Origin: Macrostomum lignano
Lineage: Eukaryota
Direction of reading: 5' to 3'
Length of the DNA stretch: 64,000 nucleotides
Assembly (NCBI GenBank): GCA_002269645.1
Contig: NIVC01000755.1
Span: forward strand, 186,001 to 250,000
Both the position numbers and the translations under genes were made by a program. Shown one piece after another: positions 13,409 through 36,275 of this stretch. The notes below the pieces were generated by a model that was not told where the DNA came from, searched no databases, and worked only from the letters and a program-made list of their open reading frames with translations. Numbering within the stretch: position 1 is the stretch's first letter; every line of letters begins with the position of its first letter.

Positions 13409-13486
13409 GATTTGCAGTCAAGTCAAAGTCAACCTAACTAGCTCAACGCAAACAGTAACGCGTACAGTCCAGCTTGACTCTATATA

Positions 13487-15047: not shown

Positions 15048-18000
15048 ACTAGCAATCTACGCCCCCCGTTGGGGAGCCAAAGAAATGCAATACACGTTTT
15101 TTTAATAAGCTACATGTATCCTTGAAATCTTAAAAAATCTCCTGTCAAACCTTGTAAGCCTTGACACGTCAGTAATTCCCCCCACAAGCTTTAACATATC
15201 AACTCCCCCCCCTGACATCTCAGCAATGCCCCCAATAAGCCTTGAAAATCTAAAAATATCTGTCAACCTTCTAACCCTAATCCAAACCTAACCCTAACCC
15301 TAACCCTAGCCTAACCCTAGCCCTAACCCTAACCCTAACCCTAACCCTAACCTAACCCTAAAGCATTGAAATTTCAGTAATTCTCTCTAAGAGTCATTAT
15401 AGCACTACTACAGCATTATTGCGATTCCCTGCAAGCCTCGACATCGTAGGGATTCCCAAATGAATCTCTTAACTTCGACATGAAGCTTCTTTTATTTTTT
15501 ACATTACGCTTTTTTTATCAGCGATCCCTCCCCTGAGGAGGCATCAAATAATGTAATAAAAAGTTTTCAATAAACTACATGTAGCTTCTGGCTTTAGCCT
15601 TGAAATCTCATTTATACCCCAGTGAGCCTTGACATCTCAGCTATTCCCCCCGTAAGCCTTGACATGTCAGCGATGGCCCCCATAAACCTTGAAATCTAAA
15701 AAATCCCCTGTTAACCTTGAAACCCGATAAAATATAACCCTCAACCCACACCTGACCTAAACCTAACTTTAACCCAACCTAAAGCCTTGAAATCTCAGCA
15801 ATTCTTCTCCCCTAAGCCTTGACATTTTAGTGATTCCTTCTTTAAGAATCACAGCACTATAACGATTTCCACCAAGCTTTGACATCGTAGCAATTCCCAA
15901 ATGAATCTTTTAACTTCGACATGACCTTTCTTTTATGTATACTTAGTGCTACTTTTATTTTTTACATGACTCTTCTTCTATCAGCGCCTCCCCCCGTGGC
16001 GAGCCAACAAAGAATGCAATAAAAAATTGAGTAAAGTACATGAACTTTGAAGTAGCTTCTGACTTTTGCTTTGACATCTCAGAACCACCCCCCCCCCCGT
16101 AATCTCAGTTATTCTCTGAGAGCCTTGACGTCTCAGTTTTTCTCCCCAGCACAGCATTATAGCTGCATTTAATTTTTACATGACACCTTCATGTCTGACA
16201 TGACGCTTCTTTTATTCTACCATGATGCTTCTTAATTTTTTAAATGACACTTTCATTAGTCTTTAAATGAGGCTTCTATGATTTTTCATGACGCTTCTAT
16301 GATTTTTACATGATGCTTCTATGATGTTTATATGACGCTTCTATGATTTTTACATGACGCTTCTATGATTTTTTACATGACGCTTCTTTGATTTTTACAT
16401 GACGCTTCTATGATTGTTTACATGACGCTTCTATGATTGTTTGCACGACGCTTCTATGATTGTTTACATGACGCTTCTATGGTTTTTACATGACGCTTAT
16501 ATTTTTTACATGACGCTTCTATGATTGTTTAGATGACGCTTCTATGATTTTTTCATGACGCTTCTATGATTTTTACATGACGCTTCTATGATTGTTTACA
16601 TGACGCTTCTATGGCTTTTACATGACGCTTATATTTTTTACATGACGCTTCTATGATTGTTTACATGACGCTTCTATGATTGTTTACATGACGCTTCCAT
16701 GATGTTTATATGACGCTTCGATGATTTTTTACATGACGCTTCTATGATTGTTTACATGACGCTTCTATGATGTTTATATGACGCTTCTATGATTTTTTAC
16801 ATGACGCTTCAATGATTTTTACGTGACGCTTCTATGATTTTTTACATGACGCTTCTATGCTTTTTATATGACGCTTCTATGATTGTTTATATGACGTTTC
16901 TATAGTTTTTACATGACGCTTATATTTTTTACATGACGCTTCTATGATTGTTTACATGACGCTTCTATGATTTTTTCATGACGCTTCTATGATTTTTTAC
17001 ATGACGCTTCTATGATTGTTTACATGACGCTTCTATGGTTTTTACATGGCGCTTATATTTTTACATAACGCTTTTATGATTGTTTACATGACGCTTCTAT
17101 GATTTTTTACATGACGCTTCTATGATTGTTTACATGACGCTTCTATGATTTTTTACATGACGCTTCTATGATTGTTTACATGACGCTTCTATGATTTTTT
17201 ACATGACGCTTCTATGATTGTTTACATGACGCTTCTATGATGTTTACATGACGCTTCTATGATTTTTACATGACGCTTCTATGATTGTTTACATGACGCT
17301 TCTATGATTTTTACGTGATGCTTCTATGATGGTTTACATGATGCTTCTATGATTGTTTACATGACGCTTCTATGATTGTTTACATGACGCTTATATGATT
17401 TTTTCATGACGCTTCTATGATTTTTTACATGACGCTTCTATGATTGTTTACATGACGCTTCTATGGTTTTTACATGACGCTTATATTTTTACATGACGCT
17501 TCTATGATTGTTTACATGACGCTTCTATGATTGTTTACATGACGCTTCTATGATGTTTATATGACGCTTCTATGATTTTTTACATGACGCTTCTATGCTT
17601 TTTACATGACGCTTCTATGATTATTTCATGACGCTTCTACGATTTCTGCAGGACGCTTCTATGATTTTTACATGACGCTTCTATGATTTTTACATGACGC
17701 TTCTATGATTGTTTACATGACGCTTCTATGATTGTTTACATGACGCTTCTATGATTGTTTATATGACGCTTCTATTATTTTTACATGACGCTTCTAAGAT
17801 TTTTTACATGACGCTTCTATGATTGTTTACATGACGCTTCGATGATTGTTTACATGACGCTTCTATGATTTTTACATGACGCTTCTATGACTATTTACAT
17901 GACGCTTCTATGATTTTTACATAACGCTTTTATGATTTTTTACATGACGCTTTTATGATTTTTTACATGACGCTTCTATGATTGTTTACATGACGCTTCT

Positions 18001-18472
18001 ATGATTGTTTACATGACGCTTCTATGATTTTTTACATGACGCTTCTATGATTTTTACATGACGCTTCTATGACTATTTACATGACGCTTCTATGATTTTT
18101 ACATAACGCTTTTATGATTTTTTACATGACGCTTCTAGGATTGTTTACATGACGCTTCTATGATTGTTTACATGACGCTTCTATGATTGTTTACATGACG
18201 CTTCTATGATTTTTTACATGACGCTTCTATGATTTTTACATGACGCTTCTATGATTGTTTACATGACGCTTCTATGATTGTTTAAATGACGCTTCTATGA
18301 TTGTTTACATGATGCTTCTATGATTTTTTACATGACGCTTCTATGATTTTTACATGACGCTTCTATGATTGTTTACATGACGCTTCTATGATTGTTTACA
18401 TGACGCTTCTATGATTGTTTACATGACGCTTCTATGATTTTTACATAACGCTTTTATGATTTTTTACATGAC
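15048..18472 (+). mobile_element. Helentron-like element, near-copy of element C, truncated by the 5S-SL array
   Basis: Same ACTAGCAATCTACGCCCCCCGTTGGGGAGCC start, (CCCTAA)n at 15271-15361 and same minisatellite. The 3' module is missing. Confidence 0.55.
16270..18472. repeat. 22-23-bp minisatellite (ACATGACGCTTCTATGATTGTTT)n
   Basis: Direct reading. Joins abruptly to 5S-SL spacer sequence at 18473. Confidence 0.97.
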
Positions 18473-18719
18473 ATAGCAGCAATCAATTAATCAATCAATT
18501 AGGCGGCGCGTTTGTGTGCACACTTTCTAAACATGTCGGCTAAAAGAAAGAAATACTTTTTCGCGCAGCTCTTTTCAAGCTGTAGTGCAAAATAATGCTG
18601 CACTAGTCGTCAAAACTTACTTGGAGTAGATAAAGTTCAACAAAATAATTTGCCCTAGGGCTCGAGGCTCAAACGGAGAGCTGTGCACTCAGTGAGAGCT
18701 GGTTCCAGCTCGTCTCTTT

Positions 18720-18830
18720 GCCGTATCGACGGTCTCTTACTGCGAAGACTCTTAATTTTGCATGGTAAGACACCGCGTGGATCCAATTGAGCGATCTACT
18801 CAATTTTTGACAAGCCGCGCTACCGCGGCT
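18720..18830 (+). ncRNA. Spliced-leader RNA gene (variant ...TCTTAATTTTGCATG)
   Basis: Exon 18720-18764, GT donor, AATTGAG/CTCAATT hairpin, Sm site AATTTTTGA, 3' hairpin. Confidence 0.88.
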
Positions 18831-18896
18831 GCCTAACAAAGCTAAAAACAAACATTAATTAATTATAGTTGGTTGATTGCCGTATCGACGGTCTCT

Positions 18897-20156
18897 GACT
18901 GTTTTTACCCTGGTTGCCTTCTGGTAGCTTGTCTAAGGGTTGTGCGCAATCCGATTGGCTATGCCAATTTCAAAGGGTCCGCCCCGGAGGGGCTGTGCCT
19001 GTTCTAAAAATAAACCCTATTCTTTTTTCTAATTTCGGCCCTCGGCCTTGGTTTAGGGGGGGTGGTGCCCGGAGTGAGTAGGTTCTCTGGACTGCAGTGT
19101 GGCTAGGACGGGACTGAGCCCCCCGGTCGAACCCGCCCTGCAGGAAAGAACGACCAATTCACAAAGGTGTACGGTAGACCCAGTAGCATGCCAGCCCTGA
19201 GGCTGAGCACCCGGGCTGCAGGCCGGCAAGCTGCCTGCTTTAGGGCTATGGTGCTCCTCCCCACTGCCATTCTTTTTTTCTGGGCTGGCATCCCAGCGCT
19301 GTTTTATCCCTAGCTTTGTGCCTTTGTGGCTTTTTATTCTTTTATTCTTTTATCTGGCCAATAGAAGCCTTCCAATTCTTGGAGTTATGAGCTCTGCCCT
19401 TGCCCGGTCCATCTTGCCCTGTCCTCGGGTCCATCTCCTGGCTCCTGCTGTAAGGTCCCTGCTTGCGTGTCTCTGGCTCTCATCCTGACAGTGGATTGGT
19501 GTCCTGGGAAGGATGTTCGTCCCGTACCGGGGACAACCGGCTGAGTCCGGAGTCCTCTTGCCCTGGGTGCCTCTTCTCCCGACCCCTTGGCCTGGCCCCC
19601 AATAATGAGCTGGATAGGCGATGCCCTTGGGTTGGTAGCAATAGAGGTGGACCTGGACGCCTGGAGTCTCCCCCTCGGATACAAGCCTTCCAGACTCACT
19701 CCAAAATAGAGCTGGGTAGTGAAAAGCCTTGAGGCTCGAGGCCTGCAGTTACCGAGTGCTGTATAGGATCGCTCTTGGTTAATAGCTGCCCAGACTCTCT
19801 CCAATAGTTAGCCCCTTTCCAAGACTTCTGGGTTTCCCCGCTCTTGGACGGCTTTTTCAGTAATTCCAATTCTGTTTTTTTCGCGCACTCCCGAGGACCT
19901 GTCTGCTGGGGGGTGGCCTGGGTGGACTCGGTCCTAGCACCGTCCCTGATTCCACTGTTTGGGTTGGCGGTGTCTTGTACCGTAGGTTTGGGTCAAATTC
20001 GCCCCCCCCGCGCTTTGAGCCGGGTCCAATCCAATCCATGGGGTATCTCGGGCCCTGGACAGATACTGCCTTGGCCCCTGGAAGTGCCCCTCGCGGCAGA
20101 GCCCACCCCAGGGCTGATCCGCGGGTCCCCCTAGGACCCTTTCGTTTAACAACAAC
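18897..20156 (+). mobile_element. 1260-bp non-autonomous non-LTR-retrotransposon-like insertion inside an SL exon
   Basis: ATCGACGGTCTCT duplicated at 18884-18896 and 20157-20169. The 3' end is hairpin GGGTCC-CCCTA-GGACCC plus TTTAACAACAAC. No RT ORF seen. Confidence 0.78.
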
Positions 20157-20262
20157 ATCGACGGTCTCTTACTGCGAAGACTCAATATTTTGCATGGTAA
20201 GACACCGCGTGGATCCAATTGAGCGATCTACTCAATTTTTGACAAGCCGCGCTACCGCGGCT
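20157..20262 (+). pseudogene. Disrupted SL RNA gene (nt 6-111; nt 1-18 lie at 18879-18896)
   Basis: SL sequence resumes at ATCGACGG directly after the AAC tail and lacks its first 5 nt and upstream flank. Confidence 0.85.
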
Positions 20263-20568
20263 GCCTAACAAAGCTAAAGACAAACATTAATTAATTATAG
20301 TTGGTTGATTGCAATTCTGGATTTAGCGTGTCCTACTATTATTTTAAACATATTCTATTTACCCGCAAGTTGTAAATTAGTTGTTGCACCATAGCATAGC
20401 ATAGCATGATATAGCGCGCATATGCATCGCCGTGTACAGAGTGCAGGCTATACTAGATCTCTTCGAGTTGCAATAATCAAATGTAATTTCTTAGATCGCT
20501 CTATGCGTGCGGATGTGCATATGTACATGTACAACTTTGTTGATGGCGCCAACAATGAATTAATTATA

Positions 20569-20844
20569 CTCAGCAACATTGAAAAGTCGGCATCACAGAA
20601 GATTCCGTCTGTGGTCGCCACTTTTGAGAGAGTGCAGGTAAAGTCTTTCTCAATATTTGCGAGTGACGCAACTCAGCTACGCCACCGGCAGACTTGAGTT
20701 GAGGAATGGAGTGGGGGAGCGGTGTGCGAGGTTTGGACGGATTAAAGCTACCCCGATCAGTTTTTCTGGCATCTTTTATTTCAGAATAGTCCAAGAGAAA
20801 TTGATCACTGGCGCATAGAGTGGCGACTTTTCAATGTTGCTGAG
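20569..20844. mobile_element. 276-bp MITE-like element in spacer (also 22202-22477, 23835-24109, 25467-25742)
   Basis: 24-bp TIR with 1 mismatch and TA on both sides, present in every unit. Confidence 0.75.
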
Positions 20845-21097
20845 TATATAGAGTCAAGCTGGACTGTACGCGTTACTGTTTGCGTTGAGCTAGTTAGGTT
20901 GACTTTGACTTGACTGCAAATCACCACTATAGTTTACTATATACTATACGAGCGCGGTAAATCCGTCCGCATTACTAATTATATATTTATTAGAGTATAG
21001 ACGAGAGGCGGCCCACAATTGATCCGTACCGTATGGTCCGTATATACATGTAGCTGCAGGTTCAGGTTAATTATGAGCTCAGCTCCTATCAGCCAGT

Positions 21098-21216
21098 GGC
21101 AACGGCCATACCACGTTGAAAACACCGGTTCTCGTCTGATCACCGAAGTTAAGCAACGTTGGGTTTGGTTAGTACTTGGATGGGTGACCGCCTGGGAATA
21201 CCAAATGCTGTTGTCT
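21098..21216 (+). rRNA. 5S rRNA gene
   Basis: 119 nt; helix I pairs GGCAACGGC with GCTGTTGTC; boxes A and C present; TTTTTT terminator. Confidence 0.98.
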
Positions 21217-21784
21217 TTTTTGCCTCTTTAACTGCATGCCGCGCGCTCATCAACTAACTCCAGCTGCTGCTACTGCATTAATACTTAGGCCCAGGCCCAC
21301 CAATCCGCCCGCGCCCGCCAACCGGATGCTGCTTGAATTTTTACCATACGGCATAGGTCTGCTGATTCCTTTCGAGTTCCACTCCACTCACTCCATCAAG
21401 TCAAGGGATTCGATTCGCGTTTCATATTTTGTATGCGCACTTTGCATTAGCACGCGGCAACGCTAATGCACTTATGAACTGTGTATTAATAGTTTTACGA
21501 GTATCTCCATCTCTCACATGGCAATTTTACTTGATTTATAGCAGCAATCAATTAATCAATCAATTAGGCGGCGCGTTTGTGTGCACACTTTCTAAACATG
21601 TCGGCTAAAAGAAAGAAATACTTTTTCGCGCAGCTCTTTTCAAGCTGTAGTGCAAAATAATGCTGCACTAGTCGTCAAAACTTACTTGGAGTAGATAAAG
21701 TTCAACAAAATAATTTGCCCTAGGGCTCGAGGCTCAAACGGAGAGCTGTGCACTCAGTGAGAGCTGGTTCCAGCTCGTCTCTTT

Positions 21785-21895
21785 GCCGTATCGACGGTCT
21801 CTTACTGCGAAGACTCAATATTTTGCATGGTAAGACACCGCGTGGATCCAATTGAGCGATCTACTCAATTTTTGACAAGCCGCGCTACCGCGGCT
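21785..21895 (+). ncRNA. Spliced-leader RNA gene (variant ...TCAATATTTTGCATG)
   Basis: GCCGTATCGACGGTCTCTTACTGCGAAGACTCAATATTTTGCATG|GTAAG, Sm site, 3' hairpin. Confidence 0.9.
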
Positions 21896-22730
21896 GCCTA
21901 ACAAAGCTAAAGACAAACATTAATTAATTATAGTTGGTTGATTGCAATTCTGGATTTAGCGTGTCCTACTATTATTTTAAACATATTCTATTTACCCGCA
22001 AGTTGTAAATTAGTTGTTGCACCATAGCATAGCATAGCATGATATAGCGCGCATATGCATCGCCGTGTACAGAGTGCAGGCTATACTAGATCTCTTCGAG
22101 TTGCAATAATCAAATGTAATTTCTTAGATCGCTCTATGCGTGCGGATGTGCATATGTACATGTACAACTTTGTTGATGGCGCCAACAATGAATTAATTAT
22201 ACTCAGCAACATTGAAAAGTCGGCATCACAGAAGATTCCGTCTGTGGTCGCCACTTTTGAGAGAGTGCAGGTAAAGTCTTTCTCAATATTTGCGAGTGAC
22301 GCAACTCAGCTACGCCACCGGCAGACTTGAGTTGAGGAATGGAGTGGGGGAGCGGTGTGCGAGGTTTGGACGGATTAAAGCTACCCCGATCAGTTTTTCT
22401 GGCATCTTTTATTTCAGAATAGTCCAAGAGAAATTGATCACTGGCGCATAGAGTGGCGACTTTTCAATGTTGCTGAGTATATAGAGTCAAGCTGGACTGT
22501 ACGCGTTACTGTTTGCGTTGAGCTAGTTAGGTTGACTTTGACTTGACTGCAAATCACCACTATAGTTTACTATATACTATACGAGCGCGGTAAATCCGTC
22601 CGCATTACTAATTATATATTTATTAGAGTATAGACGAGAGGCGGCCCACAATTGATCCGTACCGTATGGTCCGTATATACATGTAGCTGCAGGTTCAGGT
22701 TAATTATGAGCTCAGCTCCTATCAGCCAGT

Positions 22731-22849
22731 GGCAACGGCCATACCACGTTGAAAACACCGGTTCTCGTCTGATCACCGAAGTTAAGCAACGTTGGGTTTG
22801 GTTAGTACTTGGATGGGTGACCGCCTGGGAATACCAAATGCTGTTGTCT
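22731..22849 (+). rRNA. 5S rRNA gene
   Basis: Same sequence as 21098-21216. Confidence 0.98.
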
Positions 22850-23417
22850 TTTTTGCCTCTTTAACTGCATGCCGCGCGCTCATCAACTAACTCCAGCTGC
22901 TGCTACTGCATTAATACTTAGGCCCAGGCCCACCAATCCGCCCGCGCCCGCCAACCGGATGCTGCTTGAATTTTTACCATACGGCATAGGTCTGCTGATT
23001 CCTTTCGAGTTCCACTCCACTCACTCCATCAAGTCAAGGGATTCGATTCGCGTTTCATATTTTGTATGCGCACTTTGCATTAGCACGCGGCAACGCTAAT
23101 GCACTTATGAACTGTGTATTAATAGTTTTACGAGTATCTCCATCTCTCACATGGCAATTTTACTTGATTTATAGCAGCAATCAATTAATCAATCAATTAG
23201 GCGGCGCGTTTGTGTGCACACTTTCTAAACATGTCGGCTAAAAGAAAGAAATACTTTTTCGCGCAGCTCTTTTCAAGCTGTAGTGCAAAATAATGCTGCA
23301 CTAGTCGTCAAAACTTACTTGGAGTAGATAAAGTTCAACAAAATAATTTGCCCTAGGGCTCGAGGCTCAAACGGAGAGCTGTGCACTCAGTGAGAGCTGG
23401 TTCCAGCTCGTCTCTTT

Positions 23418-23528
23418 GCCGTATCGACGGTCTCTTACTGCGAAGACTCTTAATTTTACATGGTAAGACACCGCGTGGATCCAATTGAGCGATCTACTCA
23501 ATTTTTGACAAGCCGCGCTACCGCGGCT
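23418..23528 (+). ncRNA. Spliced-leader RNA gene (variant ...TCTTAATTTTACATG)
   Basis: Same architecture; third leader variant. Confidence 0.88.
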
Positions 23529-24362
23529 GCCTAACAAAGCTAAAGACAAACATTAATTAATTATAGTTGGTTGATTGCAATTCTGGATTTAGCGTGTCCT
23601 ACTATTATTTTAAACATATTCTATTTACCCGCAAGTTGTAAATTAGTTGTTGCACCATAGCATAGCATAGCATGATATAGCGCGCATATGCATCGCCGTG
23701 TACAGAGTGCAGGCTATACTAGATCTCTTCGAGTTGCAATAATCAAATGTAATTTCTTAGATCGCTCTATGCGTGCGGATGTGCATATGTACATGTACAA
23801 CTTTGTTGATGGCGCCAACAATGAATTAATTATACTCAGCAACATTGAAAAGTCGGCATCACAGAAGATTCCGTCTGTGGTCGCCACTTTTGAGAGAGTG
23901 CAGGTAAAGTCTTTCTCAATATTTGCGAGTGACGCAACTCAGCTACGCCACCGGCAGACTTGAGTTGAGGAATGGAGTGGGGAGCGGTGTGCGAGGTTTG
24001 GACGGATTAAAGCTACCCCGATCAGTTTTTCTGGCATCTTTTATTTCAGAATAGTCCAAGAGAAATTGATCACTGGCGCATAGAGTGGCGACTTTTCAAT
24101 GTTGCTGAGTATATAGAGTCAAGCTGGACTGTACGCGTTACTGTTTGCGTTGAGCTAGTTAGGTTGACTTTGACTTGACTGCAAATCACCACTATAGTTT
24201 ACTATATACTATACGAGCGCGGTAAATCCGTCCGCATTACTAATTATATATTTATTAGAGTATAGACGAGAGGCGGCCCACAATTGATCCGTACCGTATG
24301 GTCCGTATATACATGTAGCTGCAGGTTCAGGTTAATTATGAGCTCAGCTCCTATCAGCCAGT

Positions 24363-24481
24363 GGCAACGGCCATACCACGTTGAAAACACCGGTTCTCGT
24401 CTGATCACCGAAGTTAAGCAACGTTGGGTTTGGTTAGTACTTGGATGGGTGACCGCCTGGGAATACCAAATGCTGTTGTCT
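24363..24481 (+). rRNA. 5S rRNA gene
   Basis: Same sequence as 21098-21216. Confidence 0.98.
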
Positions 24482-25049
24482 TTTTTGCCTCTTTAACTGC
24501 ATGCCGCGCGCTCATCAACTAACTCCAGCTGCTGCTACTGCATTAATACTTAGGCCCAGGCCCACCAATCCGCCCGCGCCCGCCAACCGGATGCTGCTTG
24601 AATTTTTACCATACGGCATAGGTCTGCTGATTCCTTTCGAGTTCCACTCCACTCACTCCATCAAGTCAAGGGATTCGATTCGCGTTTCATATTTTGTATG
24701 CGCACTTTGCATTAGCACGCGGCAACGCTAATGCACTTATGAACTGTGTATTAATAGTTTTACGAGTATCTCCATCTCTCACATGGCAATTTTACTTGAT
24801 TTATAGCAGCAATCAATTAATCAATCAATTAGGCGGCGCGTTTGTGTGCACACTTTCTAAACATGTCGGCTAAAAGAAAGAAATACTTTTTCGCGCAGCT
24901 CTTTTCAAGCTGTAGTGCAAAATAATGCTGCACTAGTCGTCAAAACTTACTTGGAGTAGATAAAGTTCAACAAAATAATTTGCCCTAGGGCTCGAGGCTC
25001 AAACGGAGAGCTGTGCACTCAGTGAGAGCTGGTTCCAGCTCGTCTCTTT

Positions 25050-25160
25050 GCCGTATCGACGGTCTCTTACTGCGAAGACTCAATATTTTGCATGGTAAGA
25101 CACCGCGTGGATCCAATTGAGCGATCTACTCAATTTTTGACAAGCCGCGCTACCGCGGCT
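25050..25160 (+). ncRNA. Spliced-leader RNA gene (variant ...TCAATATTTTGCATG)
   Basis: Same sequence as 21785-21895. Confidence 0.9.
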
Positions 25161-25995
25161 GCCTAACAAAGCTAAAGACAAACATTAATTAATTATAGTT
25201 GGTTGATTGCAATTCTGGATTTAGCGTGTCCTACTATTATTTTAAACATATTCTATTTACCCGCAAGTTGTAAATTAGTTGTTGCACCATAGCATAGCAT
25301 AGCATGATATAGCGCGCATATGCATCGCCGTGTACAGAGTGCAGGCTATACTAGATCTCTTCGAGTTGCAATAATCAAATGTAATTTCTTAGATCGCTCT
25401 ATGCGTGCGGATGTGCATATGTACATGTACAACTTTGTTGATGGCGCCAACAATGAATTAATTATACTCAGCAACATTGAAAAGTCGGCATCACAGAAGA
25501 TTCCGTCTGTGGTCGCCACTTTTGAGAGAGTGCAGGTAAAGTCTTTCTCAATATTTGCGAGTGACGCAACTCAGCTACGCCACCGGCAGACTTGAGTTGA
25601 GGAATGGAGTGGGGGAGCGGTGTGCGAGGTTTGGACGGATTAAAGCTACCCCGATCAGTTTTTCTGGCATCTTTTATTTCAGAATAGTCCAAGAGAAATT
25701 GATCACTGGCGCATAGAGTGGCGACTTTTCAATGTTGCTGAGTATATAGAGTCAAGCTGGACTGTACGCGTTACTGTTTGCGTTGAGCTAGTTAGGTTGA
25801 CTTTGACTTGACTGCAAATCACCACTATAGTTTACTATATACTATACGAGCGCGGTAAATCCGTCCGCATTACTAATTATATATTTATTAGAGTATAGAC
25901 GAGAGGCGGCCCACAATTGATCCGTACCGTATGGTCCGTATATACATGTAGCTGCAGGTTCAGGTTAATTATGAGCTCAGCTCCTATCAGCCAGT

Positions 25996-26114
25996 GGCAA
26001 CGGCCATACCACGTTGAAAACACCGGTTCTCGTCTGATCACCGAAGTTAAGCAACGTTGGGTTTGGTTAGTACTTGGATGGGTGACCGCCTGGGAATACC
26101 AAATGCTGTTGTCT
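25996..26114 (+). rRNA. 5S rRNA gene
   Basis: Same sequence as 21098-21216. Confidence 0.98.
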
Positions 26115-26605
26115 TTTTTGCCTCTTTAACTGCATGCCGCGCGCTCATCAACTAACTCCAGCTGCTGCTACTGCATTAATACTTAGGCCCAGGCCCACCA
26201 ATCCGCCCGCGCCCGCCAACCGGATGCTGCTTGAATTTTTACCATACGGCATAGGTCTGCTGATTCCTTTCGAGTTCCACTCCACTCACTCCATCAAGTC
26301 AAGGGATTCGATTCGCGTTTCATATTTTGTATGCGCACTTTGCATTAGCACGCGGCAACGCTAATGCACTTATGAACTGTGTATTAATAGTTTTACGAGT
26401 ATCTCCATCTCTCACATGGCAATTTTACTTGATTTATAGCAGCAATCAATTAATCAATCAATTAGGCGGCGCGTTTGTGTGCACACTTTCTAAACATGTC
26501 GGCTAAAAGAAAGAAATACTTTTTCGCGCAGCTCTTTTCAAGCTTTAGTGCACAATAGTGCACAACAACTGGTTCCAGCATGCGAACTGTTTGCTTTGCC
26601 TTATC

Positions 26606-27092
26606 TTCTTGTTGTTAAACCGGGGACGGGAAGCTGTGGCTGCCGCTGGATGACGGGGGCCTATCTTCGAGGGGCATAAATCCCGAGCGGCTCAGGTTTG
26701 GACCAGGATTCATGGCCTGGAAAAGTACTCTTTTGGGCGCTACTAACTCAATATCCATGGACTAAGACGCCGCCGACCCATAGTGGAATCAGGAACGGTG
26801 CTAGGACCGAGTCTACCCAAGCCAGGTGATTTTTTTACGGGGGGATACACCAAGTTAAAAGTGCTATGTCAGAGTCACATGGTAGCATGTATAGCAACAA
26901 AGGGCAACAAAAAAGTTTTGGTCAGGCTCTTCGGGGGGATATTCCCCCTATCCCCCGCCCTCCCTACGCCCCTGGAAAATACCCGAGTGTGCGCGCGAAA
27001 AAATTTAGAAAAATTTTGGAAAAGCGGTCCGAGAGTGGGATTACCAAAGGTCTACGGAATGAGTGGAGAGTCTGGGCAAACTTATTCACCAA
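26606..27092 (-). mobile_element. Diverged relative of the SL-inserted element (3' portion)
   Basis: Shares the GTTTAACAACAA end and internal blocks, e.g. GTGGAATCAGG(G/A)ACGGTGCTAGGACCGAGTC and GGAGAGTCTGGGCA, with the reverse complement of 19780-20156. Confidence 0.75.
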
Positions 27093-28866
27093 GTCAAATG
27101 TTTTATATGGGTTTCCCCTCTCTCTCTCTGACAATGTCTACAATCGTCGATGCTTCTGGTGAATTAAATAAGTCGAAGGTTCGGTAGGTTTCTTTCGATC
27201 CAACCCTTAACAAAGATGTTTATTTCTTTCTGCGAGCGTAGTTTCTGATGGTTGCAATTTCTGACAGGATATTGATCACGCAAATTTGTTAAGCAATTCA
27301 GTGAAAATGCGGCCACAGGTTAGTTATCGATACTGTTGCGCGAATTGACGTTTGTCCAGATTTATCTTATCTTTTTGCTATCTATTAGAGAGATAGAAAT
27401 CTCTCTTTGTTAGATCGGAATATTAGAGTTCAGGCTCGATTGTTGAGGCAAGCTAGCGGAGCAGTTGAGGAGGCGAAGAGGCGGAGAGCCGAGGGCGGCG
27501 AGGGGAGGGGACAATGGGAACCGGCTTCATTCTCACTGAATGCTAGTATATATATGATTTCTATAACACATTTCATTGGTGTTCGCTTCACGCAATAGCA
27601 TCTTTACTACCGGACCGCACAAGCATGTGCTGTACTTTCCTGATAGAAAAACCTTCTGAAGTTCGCATTAGACTAAAAAATAACATTGGGCATAACATGC
27701 TTTAAAGATCACTTCACTCACTTGTGAGAAGTGTGATGATGGGATCTTCATCTAACTCCCTAACGCTGTCGAGACATAGCACATCACGAGTCAGATGCGC
27801 TGCAGGTTTCTGTGAATCAACTCAGATTTGTAAGGCTGCAAATCTCCGGAAGCATTCACATGAAAAGTAGGTGATTCCTGCTGAGTAGGCTTGTCTATCA
27901 TTAAAATGGCACTGTCGCTCTGGCAGTTTTGAAGCTTTGACGGGCAACCAAGCAGTTTGGTTCACAGCCAACGAGCGAAATGCTGCAACAGCATCCCAGT
28001 ATTCGGGGCAGTCATTGAATCCTCTGCGACATCGAATGCAGGAAAAACCGTTTTCGACATGGTCTTGTGTGAAGCTCATGAAGAGGACCGTGTCGTGCAC
28101 GCCTGTTCTGATCAGACTCTGAAACAGGCTTCAAGGATTGCAGGCTGACTTGTCAGCCCTCGTGAAAGCTCAGTCCGTTGAAAACTTTGCCATCGCGTTT
28201 AAGGAACTTTAACTTTCCAAGCCAATCAATCCATCCGTCGATTTCCTTCAGTCTGTCATTCAAATTATCAGCAGCAATGGAATTGTATTATGTCGAATCG
28301 TTGGTAAGGTCAAATAATTGATCAGCCATCTTACAAAATTAAGCCGTTCCTAGCACGGTTGGAGATGCCTATATGAACTGCATAGAATGCTGTCATATTT
28401 GCGTAGGGCGTCTGTCTAAATTTGTTCTGTGTAGCCTATAAGAATTATCGTTCCCACGCGAATGATCTTTAGTGTTTAAATAAAAGGACAGACAGTGGAG
28501 GCGCTCGCTTCACATTTCTCTCGCCCGCCTCTGAACCGAGGAATGAGACGGCTCAACACCCAACGCTCGCTGACACTTCCATTGAGTTGGCTCCTGGTCG
28601 CAAACGATTGCAGCCACGTTCAATCCCTCCTTTCAGGATGCCAGACATTCTCCCAGCATTTTCCCAAGCCGCCATGCACCGGCCAGGTGAATGGTGAACC
28701 AGAAAATGTCCAATAGGCTGTATCCATTTCGAAAAACACCCTTTAGTCACACTGCAACGAATTCATTTGCCACGAAATGAGTTTTGCCACCGGAATCGGT
28801 GCCACAGTCCTCAAAGCCAACAATCGAATCCCAATAATGCAAAGCAGCAGAGGCCACGATGCCATC

Positions 28867-30567
28867 GGGTCTACGACAATTGACTGCCACTATTTGACTG
28901 CCGACAAAATGACTGCCGACAATTTGACTGCCGGCAATTTGACTGCCAACAATTTGACTGCTGCAAAATGCAAAATGAATGCGGAAGGCCTTTTAATTTC
29001 AATAGATGGAATGGCAGCGAAGAGTTTTGTGCTGCTTTGCGCATATATTTATATTTACAACGAACTGCGCGAGATTCATGAGGGGCCAGGGGAGGTGCGA
29101 ACAGGTGGTGTGGCGTGATAGGTTACGCCAACCCCCTTGGCTTAGCGAGCCGGCTAACTTGGTGCGCAACCACCCCACCTCAGCTAGACAGAGGTTGGGG
29201 GGTTTCCAGTGCGGCTGCACTGGTGCTGCCGGTCGCGTAGTCTGGCCGCCACACTGCCGACAAAATGACTGCCGACAATTTAACTGCCGACAATTTGACT
29301 GCCAACAATTTGACTGCTGACAAAATGATTGCGGCAATTTGACTGCCAGCAAAATGACTGCCAGCAAAATGACTGCCAGCAAAATGACTGCCAAAATGAC
29401 TGCCTAAAAAACTCTCCAGTCTCTTTATTCATGATCGTATTTATGCAAGGCTAGCAAGGCTTTTTACAATGAACAAAAATGCAAGCTACATTTGGCTTTC
29501 AACAATACTTGCATGTATATCTACTAATGTTCAAACGGATCCTCCACATGTACCAGCGTAGCTGTGTTCAATGAATGCTGCTTATAGAGCTAGCCGTGCG
29601 CTAGCGTATCACTAACTTTAGCTTTGATTAGGCCTAATAAAGCTTTTCTGATAGGAGGAGTATGTGGCATTTTTTTAATTTGAAAGAATCAATAAGATTA
29701 AAATATGAGATTAATATGACATGGGAGAAAGAAAACCCTATAAACAGCATTGATTGAACACAGCTACATGTAAAAGATCAGTTTGACCATTAGTATAGCA
29801 ATCTTGCGACCCCTTCGGGGCGGCCAATAAGCAAGAGACGAAAATTATAAATGTGTATCCTATTTGTCTTGACATCTCAGAAATTTCCCGTTGTAAGCCT
29901 TGTCATCTTAGCAATTCCCCAGTAAGCATTGAGATCTCAGCAATTCCCCCAGTAAGCCTCAAAATCACAGCAATCGCCCCCGTAAGCCTTAACATCCCAA
30001 GACGTAAACATTTTTAAATGACGCTTCCTTTATATTTTAGGTTACGTTTCTTATATGTGCAACCTTACGCTGCTTTTATGTTTGATGAATTTTCTTTTGT
30101 TTTACATGACGGCTTTTATGTTTGACATGACTTTGCTTCTCTTTTTTGATATGACGCTTCTTTTACTAGTAGATAAACATGCACGTATTGTTGAAAGCCA
30201 ATGTAGCTTCCATTTTTGCTCATGTAAAAAGCCTTGCTAGCCTTGCATAAATACGATCATTAATAAAGAGACTGGAGTGTTTTTAGGCAGTCATTTTGCT
30301 GGCAGTCAAGTTGCCGCAGTCATTTTTTCGGCAGTAAAATTGTCGGCAGTCAAATTCACCGCAGTCATTTTGTCCGCAGTTATTTTGTGTGCAGTCATTT
30401 TGTCCGCAGTCAAATTGCTCGGCAGTCAAATTGCTCGGCAGTCAAATTGCTCGGCAGTCAAATTGCTCGGCAGTCAAATTGCTCGGCAGTCAAATTGCTC
30501 GGCAGTCAAATTGTCCGCAGTTAAAATTGACCGCAGTCAAATTGTGGCAGTCAATTGTCGTGCACCC
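28867..30567. mobile_element. Foldback (Mutator-like) non-autonomous element with minisatellite-built inverted arms
   Basis: Termini GGGT(CT/GC)ACGACAATTGACTGCCAC are inverted. ATGCCATC is duplicated at 28859-28866 and 30569-30576 (9 bp with 1 mismatch). Inner inverted arms are 29390-29526 and 30167-30298. Confidence 0.8.
29796..30165 (+). mobile_element. 5' fragment of a Helentron-like element nested in the foldback loop
   Basis: TAGCAATCTTGCGACCCCTTCGGGG start and CCTTGACATCTCAG-type repeats resembling 5520-6350. Confidence 0.45.
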
Positions 30568-32048
30568 CATGCCATCGATACTAAGTGTGCAAGTTTTTTC
30601 CGCTGGCGTCATTGACCTCGCGATGGAAGTAGCATGCTGAGCTGATTCTATCACAGGAAAACACCCGGCTGTCGCATACAGTTTCCGATGCTTCTGTGTA
30701 CTGTCGATCTAGACGGCAAGCAAAATCCCATGCTCCGCAGGTAGCAGTGGCATCGAGGACTGTAGTGAATTATCTCAGTGGCAAATTAAATGAAATTACA
30801 CGTCCTGCAGACAGGTCTAAGTCTCTTTAAATAATTCAAAATTAGATCTTGAATAACAGCACGAGCAGTTGGATTCAGTTTTTTTCAGGAAATTACAAAA
30901 GCATTTTGATGCGAAGCGGCTGCAGCGAAAAGCTGCTTCCAATGTTGAATTCTTAGACTTGACAGAAATTATCTGGCGTTTCAGCCTCGCCACTTGACTT
31001 CTAAGCACCATCCAGCTTCCGATTCAGTTCTTGCCTTGTTGCAGCTTTCTTCCTCTTGGTTGAGGATCGTGAAGATCAGAAGCAGGACTGCAAGGATCTG
31101 GCTGTGCCTCAGTCGACACGCTTCAAACTAACAGTGGCTTTCGGTGTCGTTCAGCAGGAACGTCCAATGTAAAGGTTCACTGTAGGATATGCACTGTTTC
31201 AAAGGCGCGTTCCCGGCTCGTGACGTTGATTTTGACAGGGTGTACATCTCATCCCTGATGCATGTGTAAGCTGCCACAACCGCTCTACCATTAGTGTTTG
31301 TTTGATTTTCCCAGAAGGTCAGCTCGAAACAATCGGCAAGCCCTGCAGTCTTCGCACCTGGAAGATGTCAGAGAGATTGAACACTGAAACGATTTCAAAA
31401 TCGAATAAGAAAAATCACACCACGAGACATTAACTTAACGATGTACTGTTCTGATCTGAAACTACATACCTCGTACTGTCTCCAGAAGGAAATGCATAGA
31501 AGCACGCCAAAGGCGGTCACTTGTAAGGCTTAGGAATTGCAGCCGTAAGCTGCGTACTGGGCTTGTGATTTTGTCAATTATTACTGCTTGCACTGCTTTT
31601 CGCCGTGAATAAAAGAATGTGCATGGCTCTTTGCTGATCTATGATTAACTCAAAAACACAAAGTAAAAATCAAAAGCCCATGCGAGTGATATAGTTTATG
31701 GTGATTATTCTACTCCCTACTGCTTTCCCACAGTTTCACAGAAATAGTAGCTTTCTACTCAGAAATACAGAAATAATTTTGCGTTGAGATTTGTTTTGCT
31801 TCAGTGGCTGAATGTAGGATTCATACATCGATTTTGCGTGCTTAAATGGTCTATGCACGAGTGCGCGCAGCGCACGAGTGCCATAGACCATTTAAGCACA
31901 AAAAATCGATGTATGAGTTGCATTGTATTACGTTGGCTTAATACTTTAGATGGCGCGTTAGATGCACGCTCAGTAAATTTGTCTTAACTATAGACAAAAA
32001 TGCGTGAAAGGCACGCAAGTTGATTGAGTGTTGCGAAGAAGGGAATAA

Positions 32049-32348
32049 GATATCTGCAAAGTCACTGGCCATAAGCAGACGCGAACTGTAGAACGCTACT
32101 TACGCATTGGCTCCAGAAGGGACGGCGAAATGCGAGACATGTCGGTCAGCTTGGCTTCTGCACTACACAAGGATGATTCCATGCAAGACGTGATTATGAA
32201 AGACTCTTCTACCGTCATGAGCCAGTCACTGATTATTTCTGACACGTCGGACGTTGCTGGTGGGACGCCAAGTGATGACGCCAAGAAGAAACCAACTGTG
32301 GTTTATAACTTCTACAACACTGTCAACAACTGCACGTTCAATTCTTAG
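32049..32348 (+). pseudogene. C-terminal fragment of a Crypton-like tyrosine recombinase
   Basis: Open frame DICKVTGHKQTRTVERYLR...MS..L...VNNCTFNS. TGH followed 9 residues later by Y fits the YR catalytic H/Y. The N-terminal part is absent. Confidence 0.6.
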
Positions 32349-35300
32349 AGTGAGTAATAACAATGAGTAATAATTTTCCCACACTGAACTTCCAAATGCT
32401 GAACGCCTTCATTCTCATTACCTTTCCCTGTCAATGATAGGTAATCGTCTACGCAGTCTACCTTGTTTACACAGTTCCCTGTTATTCGTTCGTTGTACTT
32501 GTAGCAGAAGTATACTTATTAAAATATACTCACTTTCCGTGCATTACACGCACGCGTTAGACGCACGCTTGTTGCTTTTACTCAGATAGAAAATTGCCAT
32601 AGACACCTACATTAGACGCACAGTAAATCGTGCATCTAACGCGCGCCAGCGTGATACAATGAGCATTCTGTGGTATTCTTTGGAAATAATTGCCATGCAA
32701 ATATAAGAAGAAAGCCGAAATAATGTTCCTATATGTCCCATATACCTCTTAAGTGGGTAGCGTCGTTGATAATGCCTACGCACGCTCGTGCTTTGGCCAT
32801 TATCAAGTTAAACTCAAACACTTGTAATTTTCCAGTTTACTAAGTTTTCAATGTTATTGTTGAATTGATTCTTTATATTGACTGTGTGGGTAAAATTAAA
32901 TATAATTATGCAATCAATTGGACAGGTCTGCACTTTTGCGCCAAGTGCTTGTTAAAGACAACTAAATTGTTTTATCGCTTTCAATATTATCGTGGTTAGG
33001 TTTAAATTTTTGCTTTATCGAGTCTAGTTAATTAGCACTTAATTAGTATTTAATTAGTTTCCTATCTAATACCTATTTAAATCGTCGTCATTCGCTTAAC
33101 GTAAAGTCCCTTCGAAGTTCGTTTTTGTTCATTTTTCTTTCGTTTTTACTTTTATTAACTGCAATACTTTTTTTAACTCCTTGCTTTTTCTTTCGCTTCG
33201 TTAGTCGTCCAAGTATCGTTAATAACTTTTCCGCGTTCTTTCAAATACCATTTTGCAAAACTCGTACTAATCATAATTAAATAACTAGTGCTAAAATATT
33301 GTCTCCTATTCCTGAAGCAATCTTAAATACATAGAAATATATTGGCCAAACAGGCTTCTTGCCTGAGCCAACTTACTACTACTACTAGTACCTAGAGATT
33401 CGTCCTCCTCCCTCGTCCCTCCCTCGAACTGTCAACTGTGTACTGATGGAACAGAAACTTAGGCGTTTAGTATCTAAAGAGATTTTTTGTGATGCTTAGT
33501 ATATGTGGAATGTGGACATTTGTGCATATTCTGTTAGGAGTATTCAACCTTTGAGCTTTTTTACATAGGTGTAGGAATTGGAGTCAGTATTACTGGCCGA
33601 ATACTAGACAATGCCCCTCCCCCCAATCGCTAAGAAGATACAATATTTTTACTGTAGGCTATACTGAAAACATAGCTTTGATATTTGCCTTTGACGTATT
33701 CTTTCAAGCATTACCACTTTTTTGAAAGGTTCCTTTGTCCATGCTTGTTTTATTTCAATAGAATTCAAAAAAATAATTTTTATTTTTTAAAAGATCTGCT
33801 AACTCCAATATAAACTATAGATTTTTATGTATAGCACATTGTACCAATTGACTAGATATTTAAAATCTAGCTGATCAGCTAATGTAATATAATCATTAAA
33901 GACAAGTACATTAAATTCATTTTTGACTCGATCCCATTTGCAACACTAATAATATAGCATAAGTACATCTTAAAATTATAAATGATAAAAATATTTTAAT
34001 GCATATATAGTCAGAAAGTTTTATAATATAAAATACAATTTAAACAGTTTTTTACATTCATATTTGTACTTTAATACTAAATGCCATACAAATGCCAAAT
34101 ATTAAGATTAAGAAGGCTTAACTCTGCATTGTTTTAGTTCACCCAGATGTAAAATGGGTGCCAGCATCAGCTGGGGTAATTGAGGGTGTTTGTGGCGACT
34201 CCCCAGTCTTTGGACTGAACAGCCTTTAGATATGCCACACAAATAGCTGTAGCTAAGCTGTTGGTTGCACATCTCCCTAATTAGGTCAGGTATAATCAAT
34301 TATATAATTATATAATATATAATATTAAATATATATCATTAATACTAAAGTACCAAAAGTATACATAGTGTTTCCCAAAAGTTTAATTGAGAATTTTCTA
34401 GAATTAATAATAGTATATTATTATAGTCATTTTTTACTTTTTTATTATTTTATATGATGATAGACCAAGGTGGCCACAGACCAACGTGGCTACAATGGCT
34501 ACAAAGCAAACCCATTTCTTTTTTGGTTTAGAAAGATGAGAAGGATAGGATATAGGAATGGAAGCTCTCTTATTAATCCCCTCTACCTCAATCTCCCTAC
34601 CTTATTTGCCAAAATATCTAGTATTAGATAGCTTTTGAATGGTAACTAATATATAACTGGCTATTTAGCTATATATATAACTGGCAATTATAATTAATTA
34701 TAGTCAAAATTATAGTTGAGACCAAAGAGATATACACAATGGTCTTCTCTATATCCTAGTAGCTAGAAATAGCCAATAGCAATTAAAAGAAGTTCAAATC
34801 TATTTCTCATTGCACAAGCCAATTAGAGCTATGGCCACCTTTAGTATGTGGCCACTTTAGACATGCATTTTTTATTGCTAGTACTTTTGAAGGCTTAATG
34901 CTGCTCAAGTAAATTAAAATTTTGGAAATATATACCTATTTATAAAATTTTTATTGATTGCCTATGCAAGTGTAATGTACTCATTTATTTAAGATTTAGT
35001 ATTTGAATTGTCTAGAATCTTTTTGTATAATTAGACAAATGTTTTTATGTCAGAGGTTGGCAAAGAAATTGGCATACTTTGTGTATATAAAAAATTAGCT
35101 ATATGCTGTTTATATTAGCAAAATTATGTTAATTGTATTTTAAATTAAAAGTTCATATTGACATGTTTTTATAGGCTAGTATAGAGAAAATTCTTATCTA
35201 TGAATTATAGCAAGTGTATGTATACACTTGTCTTTAAGAATTATTTCTTTTATAAGTTCTCTGATTTCTTTGTTTGTATGAATAGTAGGCATAAATTTTA

Positions 35301-35596
35301 AGTTGGCATATGTGGCATAAAGTTCAGGAGTGCTAAAACTTCTACCAATCAGCATAATCTGGACTATGGTTAGTTTTCGCATTTAAGCATTATTAATACC
35401 CTTGGTGCAATTCCTAAATTCTATATAGTTTTATATCAAAGTCTGTTAATAAGCCTTCAAATATCATTTTGAATTGAACTTTTTGTATCTTGGATTTCTT
35501 TCTGAAATTTTTTATGCAACAGCCAAATGGTTTATGGACCACTGACCATGGCCACGACTGGAAATTTTCAGGCCAGCACAACAAATCTGACATCGC

Positions 35597-35937: not shown

Positions 35938-35939
35938 GT

Positions 35940-36200: not shown

Positions 36201-36275
36201 ACATAACTTTCTTTTTACTCTGCTACTCCACATCGCGCCCCAAACCGCAATCCCGCACATCTGTCCACCACGCAG

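What the first reader, a model, noticed from the sequence alone, without database searches (positions are those of the whole stretch)
26560..27092. Second, diverged family member at an SL-like site, in the opposite orientation
Seen: the reverse complement of 26606-27092 ends GTTTAACAACAAG and shares several 15-35-nt blocks with 19780-20156, with an extra ~150-bp internal segment. Its 3' flank on the minus strand, GATAAGGCAAAG...CTGGAACCAG, matches the antisense of the SL start and upstream flank (GATACGGCAAAG...CTGGAACCAG). The SL target is quasi-palindromic (CCGTATCGACGG vs CCGTCGATACGG). Inference: two independent insertions of related elements at nearly symmetric positions of the same SL hairpin. 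That would support sequence specificity and an old family, and the shared blocks would mark the RNA signals the RT recognises. The SL-like flank is degenerate and no second TSD copy is visible.
Basis: partly seen in the sequence, partly recalled or inferred. Interest (0 to 1): 0.72.

Follow-up and report, generated by a model that had tools for sequence, protein, structure and literature searches.

The report
Old backwards retroelement in spliced-leader gene
At the right-hand edge of a flatworm 5S rRNA/spliced-leader gene array lies an old, non-coding relic of a mobile element, inserted backwards at almost the same spot of the spliced-leader gene where a younger relative sits forwards; this supports site-specific targeting but is a single decayed copy.

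Summary
On the minus strand, 27093..26608 (E2) is homologous to the last ~380 nt of the element at 18897-20156 (E1). Smith-Waterman z is 26 against shuffles. The core is a 63-nt block at 87% identity (E=2e-15), both end in GTTTAACAACAA, and E2 has ~150 extra internal nt.

The window is a macrostomid-type flatworm 5S rRNA + SL RNA tandem array with a ~1633-bp unit. E2 sits where the next SL gene is due. Positions 26562-26605 are a relic SL promoter plus SL nt 1-7. That promoter carries a GCGAACT motif shared with an M. lignano-type SL gene, which the homogenised array has lost.

- E1's 3' end joins SL nt 5.
- E2's 3' end joins the opposite strand at nt 7-9 of the same CCGT-ATCG-ACGG hairpin.

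Neither element codes for protein, and the window holds no reverse transcriptase. The best reading is an old, 5'-truncated copy of a non-autonomous SL-specific non-LTR retroelement that primed on the other strand.

Independent antisense insertion is the most economical explanation but is unproven. There is no 5' junction, no target-site duplication and no SL remainder, and no further copies could be retrieved. The idea that the shared blocks are RNA signals has only uneven conservation behind it, not folding or covariation.

The parts
26115..26561 (+). Last homogenised stretch of the 5S rRNA / SL RNA tandem array, running from after the last 5S gene (25996-26114) up to the point where identity to the other units stops
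   Evidence: Self-BLAST gives 99.7% identity of 20157-24928 to 21790-26561, ending abruptly at 26561. The 5S genes were found by Rfam.
26562..26598 (+). Relic, ancestral-type SL gene promoter: GTGCAC..CTGGTTCCAGC ATGCGAACTGTTTG CTTTG. It is about 99 bp shorter than the canonical upstream region.
   Evidence: The alignment with canonical units and with metagenome contig L002 (M. lignano-type SL gene) shows three things. CTGGTTCCAGC and CTTTGCC are shared with the canonical units. GCGAACT(G/T)TT is shared only with L002. z = 4-4.5 against shuffles.
26599..26605 (+). SL exon nt 1-7 of the interrupted gene: CCTTATC against canonical CCGTATC. The G3>T change breaks the hairpin stem.
   Evidence: Direct reading. 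The canonical SL start is defined against the M. lignano SL consensus quoted in PMC5173321.
26606..26607 (.). Two junction bases (TT on +, AA on -) that cannot be assigned. They may be mutated SL nt 8-9, the element tail, or untemplated bases.
   Evidence: Direct reading. The canonical SL has GA at these positions.
26608..26620 (-). E2 3' terminus GTTTAACAACAAG. E1 ends GTTTAACAACAAC.
   Evidence: Only two matches to GTTTAACAACAA in the window, each abutting the SL hairpin.
26621..26763 (-). E2 3' third, only weakly alignable with E1 19977-20143
   Evidence: z = 3.0 without the main block. About 60% identity under a gap-lenient alignment.
26764..26824 (-). Most conserved block: TGGCTTGGGTAGACTCGGTCCTAGCACCGTTCCTGATTCCACT..GGGTCGGCGGCGTCTT
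   Evidence: 87% over 63 nt against E1 19914-19976, E = 2e-15. It includes a 19-nt exact run. It shows no excess folding stability.
26838..26985 (-). E2-specific internal segment of about 150 nt, absent from E1. It includes a G5-AATAT-C6 near-palindrome.
   Evidence: Global alignment. It has no other copy in the window.
26986..27093 (-). E2 5' third, homologous to E1 19774-19890. Shared pieces are CTTGGT.AATA..TGCCCAGACTCTC, CTCGGACCGCTTTT and TTTTTTCGCGC. Similarity to E1 ends at about 27093-27098.
   Evidence: z = 8.9; alignment; the nhmmer envelope is 27097-26607. GC falls from about 51% to about 38% beyond 27100.
18884..20156 (+). E1, the comparison element: a non-coding 1.26-kb sense insertion in a canonical SL gene, with the 3' end joined to SL nt 5. 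The direct repeat ATCGACGGTCTCT is at 18884-18896 and 20157-20169. It extends to 18 nt with one mismatch.
   Evidence: family D4. No terminal inverted repeats. No Pfam domain in any forward frame.

Best explanation
E2 (26608-27093, minus strand) is an old, 5'-truncated and now decayed copy of a non-coding retroelement family. [quoted passage not shown]

**Shown**
- E2 is homologous to E1.
- It lies in the terminal, relic SL gene of the 5S-SL array.
- Its orientation is opposite to E1's.
- E1's 3' end is joined to SL nt 5, so the bottom strand ...CCGTCGAT-3' acted as primer. E2's 3' end is joined to the top strand ending ...CCTTATC(TT)-3', that is after nt 7-9.
- Neither element codes for protein.

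**Inferred**
- Both are non-autonomous passengers, or 3' modules, of an SL-specific non-LTR retrotransposon encoded elsewhere in the genome.
- The shared terminal GTTTAACAACAA and the conserved internal blocks are what that enzyme needs in the RNA.
- The two-fold symmetric stems let the endonuclease occasionally, or in one lineage regularly, engage the site the other way round and nick the top strand.
- E1 begins with SL nt 1-17(22). This suggests that sense copies are transcribed from the SL promoter. If so, an antisense copy such as E2 would be dead on arrival.
- Once interrupted, this edge gene dropped out of array homogenisation. That would explain why its promoter kept an ancestral form and why E2 has drifted.
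For: - **Homology:** z = 26, and E = 2e-15 for the core block.
- **Termini:** both elements end in the same 12-mer exactly at the junction with the SL hairpin.
- **Position in the array:** 5S and SL genes recur every ~1633 bp. E2 interrupts the next expected SL gene.
- **Relic promoter:** it shares motifs with canonical units and, uniquely, GCGAACT with an M. lignano-type SL gene.
- **Non-LTR hallmarks in E1:** a 13/18-bp direct repeat, no terminal inverted repeats and a short (AAC)n tail.
- **No coding capacity:**
- **Uneven conservation along the module:** p about 0.001.
- **5' truncation:** there is no homology of 27099-28000 to E1's 5' 880 nt (z = -0.1), and GC content drops there.
- **Junction detail:** the junction keeps top-strand loop bases ATC. 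This is what direct priming from the top strand predicts. Annealing of a read-through RNA tail would instead give CGAT (direct reading).
- **Precedents:** SLACS and CZAR insert at a fixed position in SL genes (PMC5814959). TRAS and SART insert into one target in opposite directions (PMC7265360).
Against: - There is only one antisense copy.
- Its 5' junction leads into unrelated AT-richer DNA.
- There is no target-site duplication and no remainder of the SL unit within 9 kb. A clean insertion therefore cannot be reconstructed.
- No reverse transcriptase or endonuclease was seen, so the retroelement nature rests on structure alone.
- The two junction bases are ambiguous, so the nick position is only known to within nt 6-9.
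- No structural or covariation support exists for RNA signals.
- No further copies could be retrieved from any collection.
Confidence: 0.6

Rival explanations
1. E2 was inserted in the usual sense orientation into an SL gene and was later turned round or re-joined by a rearrangement at the array edge. The rearrangement could be an inversion, a fold-back or template switch at the palindromic SL hairpin, or a junction between oppositely oriented array blocks. The antisense configuration would then be secondary.
For: - The locus is rearrangement-prone. A complete unit is inverted at 13409-15045, the satellite block is segmentally duplicated, and about 1.48 kb of a unit is missing next to E1.
- E2 lies exactly at the end of the array. 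Everything downstream of the SL hairpin is missing.
- The hairpin stems are palindromic.
Against: - One breakpoint would have to coincide to the base with the element's 3' terminus.
- A switch inside the shared ACGG stem would give tail-ATCGACGG-CAAAG. The observed junction reads tail-AAGATAAGG-CAAAG, which keeps antisense loop bases GAT.
- No inverted SL remainder lies nearby.
Confidence: 0.2
2. E2 is an accidental by-product of a strictly sense-specific enzyme. Reverse transcription was primed from the second-strand (top-strand) break of an attempted sense integration, after some resection. There would then be no symmetric recognition of the hairpin and no antisense lineage.
For: - E1's direct repeat places the top-strand break for sense integration at nt 17/18 or 22/23. 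That gives a free top-strand 3' end close by.
- If the family depends on the SL promoter, as E1's 5' SL nt 1-17(22) suggest, an antisense copy could not propagate. That fits a one-off event.
Against: - The E2 primer end is at nt 7-9, so 8-15 nt of resection would be needed.
- E2 differs from E1 by large indels and about 150 extra nt. This fits a separate old lineage as well as it fits decay.
Confidence: 0.15
3. The resemblance is chance, or E1 and E2 are not retroelements. They could be a DNA transposon of the kind that targets small-RNA genes, or an SL tag acquired by trans-splicing of a retrotransposon transcript.
For: - No reverse transcriptase is seen in the window.
- Partial SL sequences next to mobile elements in parasitic flatworms have been explained by trans-spliced transcripts (PMC12582326).
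Against: - Alignment z = 26.
- No terminal inverted repeats.
- The flanks carry the SL promoter (E2) and the SL intron plus the array (E1), not merely a leader tag.
- Only SL nt 1-17/22 precede E1, not the full 44-nt leader.
Confidence: 0.04

Closest known systems
SLACS / CZAR / CRE1-2 (trypanosomatid SL-gene-specific non-LTR retrotransposons)
   Same: They insert at one fixed position near the 5' end of the SL exon in tandem SL gene arrays. SLACS and CZAR insert between nt 11 and 12 (PMC5814959). A sense copy sits just downstream of the SL promoter.
   Different: - Those elements are autonomous, with a reverse transcriptase and a restriction-like endonuclease, and have one orientation.
- Here no ORF is present, the host is a flatworm, the site is nt 4/5 (E1) or nt 7-9 on the other strand (E2), and orientation differs between the two copies.
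- Clade membership cannot be tested without a reverse transcriptase.
NeSL-1 (nematode SL1-specific element, Utopia/NeSL group)
   Same: It is an SL-exon-specific non-LTR retrotransposon in an animal (PMC4640811).
   Different: It is autonomous and belongs to a different phylum and a different SL. No sequence relation could be tested.
TRAS and SART of Bombyx mori
   Same: These are related site-specific elements that use the same short target in opposite directions, each nicking a different strand (PMC7265360).
   Different: - Their target is a telomeric repeat, not a hairpin-coding palindrome.
- Both are well-populated autonomous families with characterised endonucleases.
- Here there is one copy of each orientation and no enzyme.
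R2 SIDEs and LINE-dependent SINEs (non-autonomous elements sharing a LINE 3' end)
   Same: They are non-coding and share the site specificity of a presumed partner, with a conserved 3' module and terminus. This comparison rests on established knowledge, not on anything tested here.
   Different: The partner LINE was not found, so sharing of the 3' module is an inference.

Membership tests
SL-gene-specific non-LTR retrotransposons (SLACS/CZAR/CRE, NeSL) | 3' junction at a fixed position inside the SL exon of an SL RNA gene | tested here: met
   E1 joins at SL nt 4/5. E2 joins after nt 7-9 of a relic SL gene, on the opposite strand. There are only two copies.
SL-gene-specific non-LTR retrotransposons (SLACS/CZAR/CRE, NeSL) | Encodes a reverse transcriptase and an endonuclease | tested here: not met
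   - No ORF of 150 aa or more lies in or next to E1 or E2.
- Pfam finds nothing in the three sense frames of E1 or of E2 plus 1.9 kb upstream.
- Protein database searches were empty.
- None of the long ORFs tested has a reverse transcriptase domain.

The copies are therefore non-autonomous or truncated.
SL-gene-specific non-LTR retrotransposons (SLACS/CZAR/CRE, NeSL) | Target-site duplication or defined target alteration at both junctions | tested here: inconclusive
   E1 has a 13-bp perfect, or 18-bp with one mismatch, direct repeat. E2 has no recognisable 5' junction or SL remnant.
SL-gene-specific non-LTR retrotransposons (SLACS/CZAR/CRE, NeSL) | Constant orientation relative to the SL gene | tested here: not met
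   E1 is sense and E2 is antisense.
SL-gene-specific non-LTR retrotransposons (SLACS/CZAR/CRE, NeSL) | Reverse transcriptase phylogeny places it in the CRE or NeSL clade | not testable with these tools
   No reverse transcriptase sequence is available, and no eukaryotic genome collection is searchable by DNA.
Non-autonomous passenger of a LINE (SIDE/SINE-like) | Non-coding, with a 3' module shared among copies and with the autonomous partner | tested here: inconclusive
   The elements are non-coding and share a 3' module with each other. The partner was not found, so sharing with a LINE is untested.
Opposite-orientation sister families on one target (TRAS/SART type) | Each family consistently uses one strand, shown by many copies or by enzyme specificity | not testable with these tools
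   There is one copy of each orientation in the window. Searches for more copies returned nothing.
DNA transposons targeting small-RNA genes (Dada-like) | Terminal inverted repeats and a short fixed target-site duplication | tested here: not met
   No terminal inverted repeats in E1, and the direct repeat is 13-18 bp.
SL tag acquired by trans-splicing of a retrotransposon transcript | Full leader at the element's 5' end, with flanks lacking the SL promoter and intron | tested here: not met
   The E2 flank is SL promoter. E1's 3' flank is the SL gene with its intron part and the array. Only leader nt 1-17/22 precede E1.

The most novel reading that the evidence does not exclude
Flatworms harbour a so far undescribed lineage of SL-gene-specific retroelements. 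Its endonuclease would recognise the two-fold symmetric stem of the SL 5' hairpin as DNA, and so could integrate in either orientation within the 4-nt loop. Old sublineages would be specialised for each strand, and non-coding passengers would be transcribed from the SL promoter. The conserved 63-nt block and the GTTTAACAACAA tail would be the RNA recognition module.
Probability: 0.2. Interest if true: 0.7.

Novelty: new member of a known kind. Interest (0 to 1): 0.42.

Why it matters
Site-specific retroelements in multicopy RNA genes are model systems for target-primed reverse transcription and are being developed as gene-insertion tools.

SL-gene specialists are known from trypanosomatids and nematodes. 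My literature searches found none described for flatworms.

Two independent hits inside one 12-nt hairpin, on opposite strands, would be a natural experiment on how symmetric targets are read. It would show whether specificity lies in the stems and whether orientation is set by the loop.

The copy also illustrates how an interrupted edge gene escapes concerted evolution and preserves an ancestral promoter form.

The evidence is one decayed copy, so the value is as a lead for a genome-wide census, not as a result.

Tried and rejected
**Fetching more copies through spurious ORFs.** All attempts were empty, so this genome's non-coding ORFs are not in the protein collection.
- I searched the protein collection with the E2 antisense ORF.
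- I searched it with a concatenate of all 20 stop-free stretches of E1.
- I ran exact look-ups of two ORFs.

**DNA scans.**
- Scans for the conserved block found nothing in metagenome contigs or viral contigs.
- A scan for the SL itself gave one M. lignano-type SL gene contig (L002) and one trans-spliced mRNA (L001). Neither carries an element. A viral scan for the SL was empty.

**Rfam.** The E-value scan of both elements gave only chance-level hits. No tRNA was found, so there is no sign of a SINE head derived from a small RNA.

**SL remnant at the E2 5' side.** The 7-mer ATCGACG at 27151-27145 (-) looked like an SL nt 5-11 remnant. Local alignment of the SL and of E1's 5' end against 27093-27800 is at or below shuffle level, so I rejected it.

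**Conserved 3'-terminal RNA architecture.**
- Both ends fold as two hairpins plus a single-stranded tail.
- E1 gives z = -3.2, but E2 gives only z = -1.2.
- Homologous bases take different roles in the two folds.
- I do not count this as evidence.

**RNAalifold on two sequences.** It reports 10 'compensatory' pairs. These lie in the poorly aligned parts and cannot be assessed statistically.

**Read-through RNA tail annealing to the palindromic stem.** This model predicts CGAT at the junction, and ATC is observed.

Full report
**Context**

The window is eukaryotic.
- Rfam finds five 5S rRNA genes.
- A 25-nt SL probe finds six SL genes.
- Together they form a tandem array with a unit of about 1633 bp.
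- The leader reads CCGTATCGACGGTCTCTTACTGCGAAGACTCAATATTTTGCATG. By my count from the two strings, that is 40 of 44 identical to the Macrostomum lignano leader quoted in PMC5173321. The source is therefore a macrostomid-type flatworm, but not M. lignano itself.

The layout from self-BLAST is:
- one complete inverted unit at 13409-15045;
- a 23-bp satellite up to 18472;
- a partial unit at 18462-18880;
- element E1 at 18884/18897-20156;
- 3.9 units at 99.7% identity from 20157 to 26561;
- then the region of the finding.

Yes.
- GTTTAACAACAA occurs twice in 64 kb, at 20144-20155 (+) and 26609-26620 (-).
- The last 387 nt of E1 against the reverse complement of 26606-27110 score 85, against 20.3 +/- 2.4 for dinucleotide shuffles (z = 26). 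The wrong strand gives z = 0.7.
- The core is a 63-nt block at 87% identity, E = 2e-15.
- Without it, the 5' third is still significant (z = 8.9). The 3' third is marginal (z = 3.0) and owes that to the terminal 12-mer.
- A global alignment runs from E1 19774 / E2 27093 to the termini. It shows about 150 nt present only in E2.
- A profile built from the pair finds no third copy in the window.

**The flank**

It is better than that.
- Array identity of 99.7% continues to 26561 and then stops abruptly.
- The next 44 nt sit where the next SL promoter is due. They read ...CTGGTTCCAGC ATGCGAACTGTTTG CTTTG CCTTATC, against canonical ...CTGGTTCCAGC TCGTCT CTTTG CCGTATC GACGG.
- The extra GCGAACT(G/T)TT is absent from every homogenised unit. 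It is present in the M. lignano-type SL gene on metagenome contig L002.

The flank is therefore a genuine SL gene of an older promoter type. It sits at the array edge and is frozen outside concerted evolution. SL nt 1-7 are 26599-26605, and G3>T breaks the stem. Positions 26606-26607 are two unassignable bases, and the element terminus is 26608-26620.

**Junction geometry**

- E1...AACAAC|ATCGACGG. The bottom strand ending ...CCGTCGAT-3' primed, which is a nick between SL nt 4 and 5. The direct repeat ATCGACGGTCTCT is 13 bp perfect, or 18 bp with one mismatch.
- E2: the top strand ending ...CCTTATC(TT)-3' is joined to the complement of the same tail, which is a nick after nt 7-9.
- Both fall in the 4-nt loop of CCGT-ATCG-ACGG. 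Only the stems are palindromic.
- 'Nearly symmetric' is therefore a fair description.

**What the elements are**

- E1 has no terminal inverted repeats. It has a target duplication and a short (AAC)3 tail.
- Neither element has an ORF or a Pfam domain.
- A six-frame concatenate of E1 finds nothing among 5.8 billion proteins.
- Rfam and ARAGORN find no small-RNA-derived head.
- None of the ten long ORFs tested with Pfam has a reverse transcriptase domain; one carries a protein-kinase domain.
- There are weak, sub-threshold traces of a P-element-type transposase at about 28005-28830 (-).

Both are best read as non-autonomous passengers, or bare 3' modules, of an SL-specific non-LTR retrotransposon encoded elsewhere.

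E1 starts with SL nt 1-17(22). This is what a transcript from the SL promoter of a sense copy would carry. An antisense copy could not be expressed that way.

**E2's 5' side**

- Similarity to E1 ends at 27093-27098.
- The next 900 nt have no relation to E1's 5' 880 nt (z = -0.1).
- GC falls from about 51% to about 38%.
- No SL or array remnant exists in 26562-36000 on either strand.

E2 is therefore 5'-truncated and coincides exactly with the end of the array. The downstream part of its target is gone. This is the main weakness of the 'independent antisense insertion' reading, because a clean empty site cannot be rebuilt.

**Weighing the readings**

- *Inversion or fold-back.* This needs a breakpoint exactly at the element terminus. 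A switch within the shared ACGG stem would give tail-ATCGACGG-CAAAG. The observed tail-AAGATAAGG-CAAAG keeps the antisense loop bases.
- *Read-through RNA tail annealing to the palindromic stem.* This would give CGAT at the junction, and ATC is seen.
- *Direct priming from a top-strand 3' end at nt 7-9.* This is the simplest account.

The data cannot say whether that end came from symmetric recognition by the endonuclease or from resection of the second-strand break of a sense attempt. E1's repeat places that break at nt 17/18 or 22/23.

**RNA signals**

- Conservation along the module is uneven. The best 60-nt window has 55 of 60 identical, reached in 19 of 20,000 permutations. This fits constraint in the active lineages.
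- The 63-nt block folds no better than shuffles (z +0.76 and +1.67).
- The whole modules give z -1.0 and +0.96.
- The two-sequence consensus fold cannot be tested.
- The 3'-terminal 72-75 nt fold as two hairpins plus a free tail in both elements, but with different homologous bases in the stems.

The inference is reasonable but unsupported.

**Comparison with known systems**

- SLACS and CZAR insert between nt 11 and 12 of trypanosome SL genes (PMC5814959).
- NeSL targets nematode SL1 (PMC4640811).
- TRAS and SART use one telomeric target in opposite directions (PMC7265360).
- In parasitic flatworms, partial leaders next to mobile elements have been attributed to trans-spliced transcripts (PMC12582326). 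That does not fit here, because the flanks carry the SL promoter and intron.
- I found no description of SL-gene-specific elements in flatworms.

**Verdict**

- The SL-site claim is strengthened.
- Opposite orientation is confirmed.
- Independent antisense integration is the most economical reading (about 0.6) but rests on a single, old, one-sided junction.
- The finding is a new member of a known kind (site-specific retroelements of SL genes), with an unusual orientation that deserves a genome-wide census.

Noticed in passing
window 18868-18901: E1's left junction is not a simple insertion. The preceding unit breaks off at ...GTTGGTTGATTG and is joined directly to CCGTATCGACGGTCTCTgACTG, which is SL nt 1-22 with one mismatch at nt 18. 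The SL promoter and about 1.48 kb of a unit are missing. This fits a full-length cDNA of an SL-promoter-driven transcript joined upstream by TTG microhomology with target deletion, or a later unequal exchange.
   Followed up: partly
window 13409-15045: Exactly one complete array unit (1637 bp, with 5S at 14748-14866 and an intact SL gene) lies in inverted orientation to the main array. It is separated from the array by the satellite block. Both ends map to the same unit coordinate (about 20919/22555).
   Followed up: partly
window 14145-14169(-), 18730-18754, 23428-23452 vs 20162, 21795, 25060: Two leader variants are interleaved in the otherwise 99.7%-identical array: ...GAAGACTCTTAATTTTGCATG and ...GAAGACTCAATATTTTGCATG.
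   Followed up: no
window 5519-10067 and 15047-18472; also 29925-30165: A segmental duplication at 91.5% identity pairs a unique stretch with a 23-bp satellite (ACATGACGCTTCTATGATTTTTT). A short copy at about 70% identity, in the same order, lies 2.9 kb right of E2. The 5S-SL array is thus embedded between copies of this block.
   Followed up: no
window ~28005-28830 (-), ORF 27822-28100 (-): Weak, sub-threshold Pfam matches to TNP-like RNase H N- and C-terminal domains (P-element/THAP9-type transposase). The motif is ...ENGFSCIRCRRGFNDCP. This is a probable decayed DNA-transposon relic just beyond E2.
   Followed up: partly
window 35597-42828 (+): This looks like a host protein-kinase gene. 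A Pkinase domain lies at 41602-41850 (E = 1e-22). ORFs at 35597-36450 may be further exons; I did not test them, and calling them DYRK-like rests only on my reading of the translation. They flank a proline/histidine-rich repeat. The whole 36-64 kb part is GC-rich with strong negative GC skew and many overlapping stop-free frames.
   Followed up: no
window 10615-13403: A 1.4-kb tandem duplication at 95.6% identity contains 80-bp internal repeats. It lies immediately left of the inverted array unit.
   Followed up: no
window 19599-19804: E1 contains two to three degenerate internal repeats of about 100 nt (for example 19669-19704 against 19769-19804, 72%). The module shared with E2 begins inside the last one.
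   Followed up: no
L002 601-660: A soil or wetland metagenome contig (Ga0302322_100095745) carries an M. lignano-type SL RNA gene next to what looks like a protein-coding ORF. It shows that flatworm DNA is present in that metagenome. Its promoter helped to polarise the relic promoter beside E2.
   Followed up: partly
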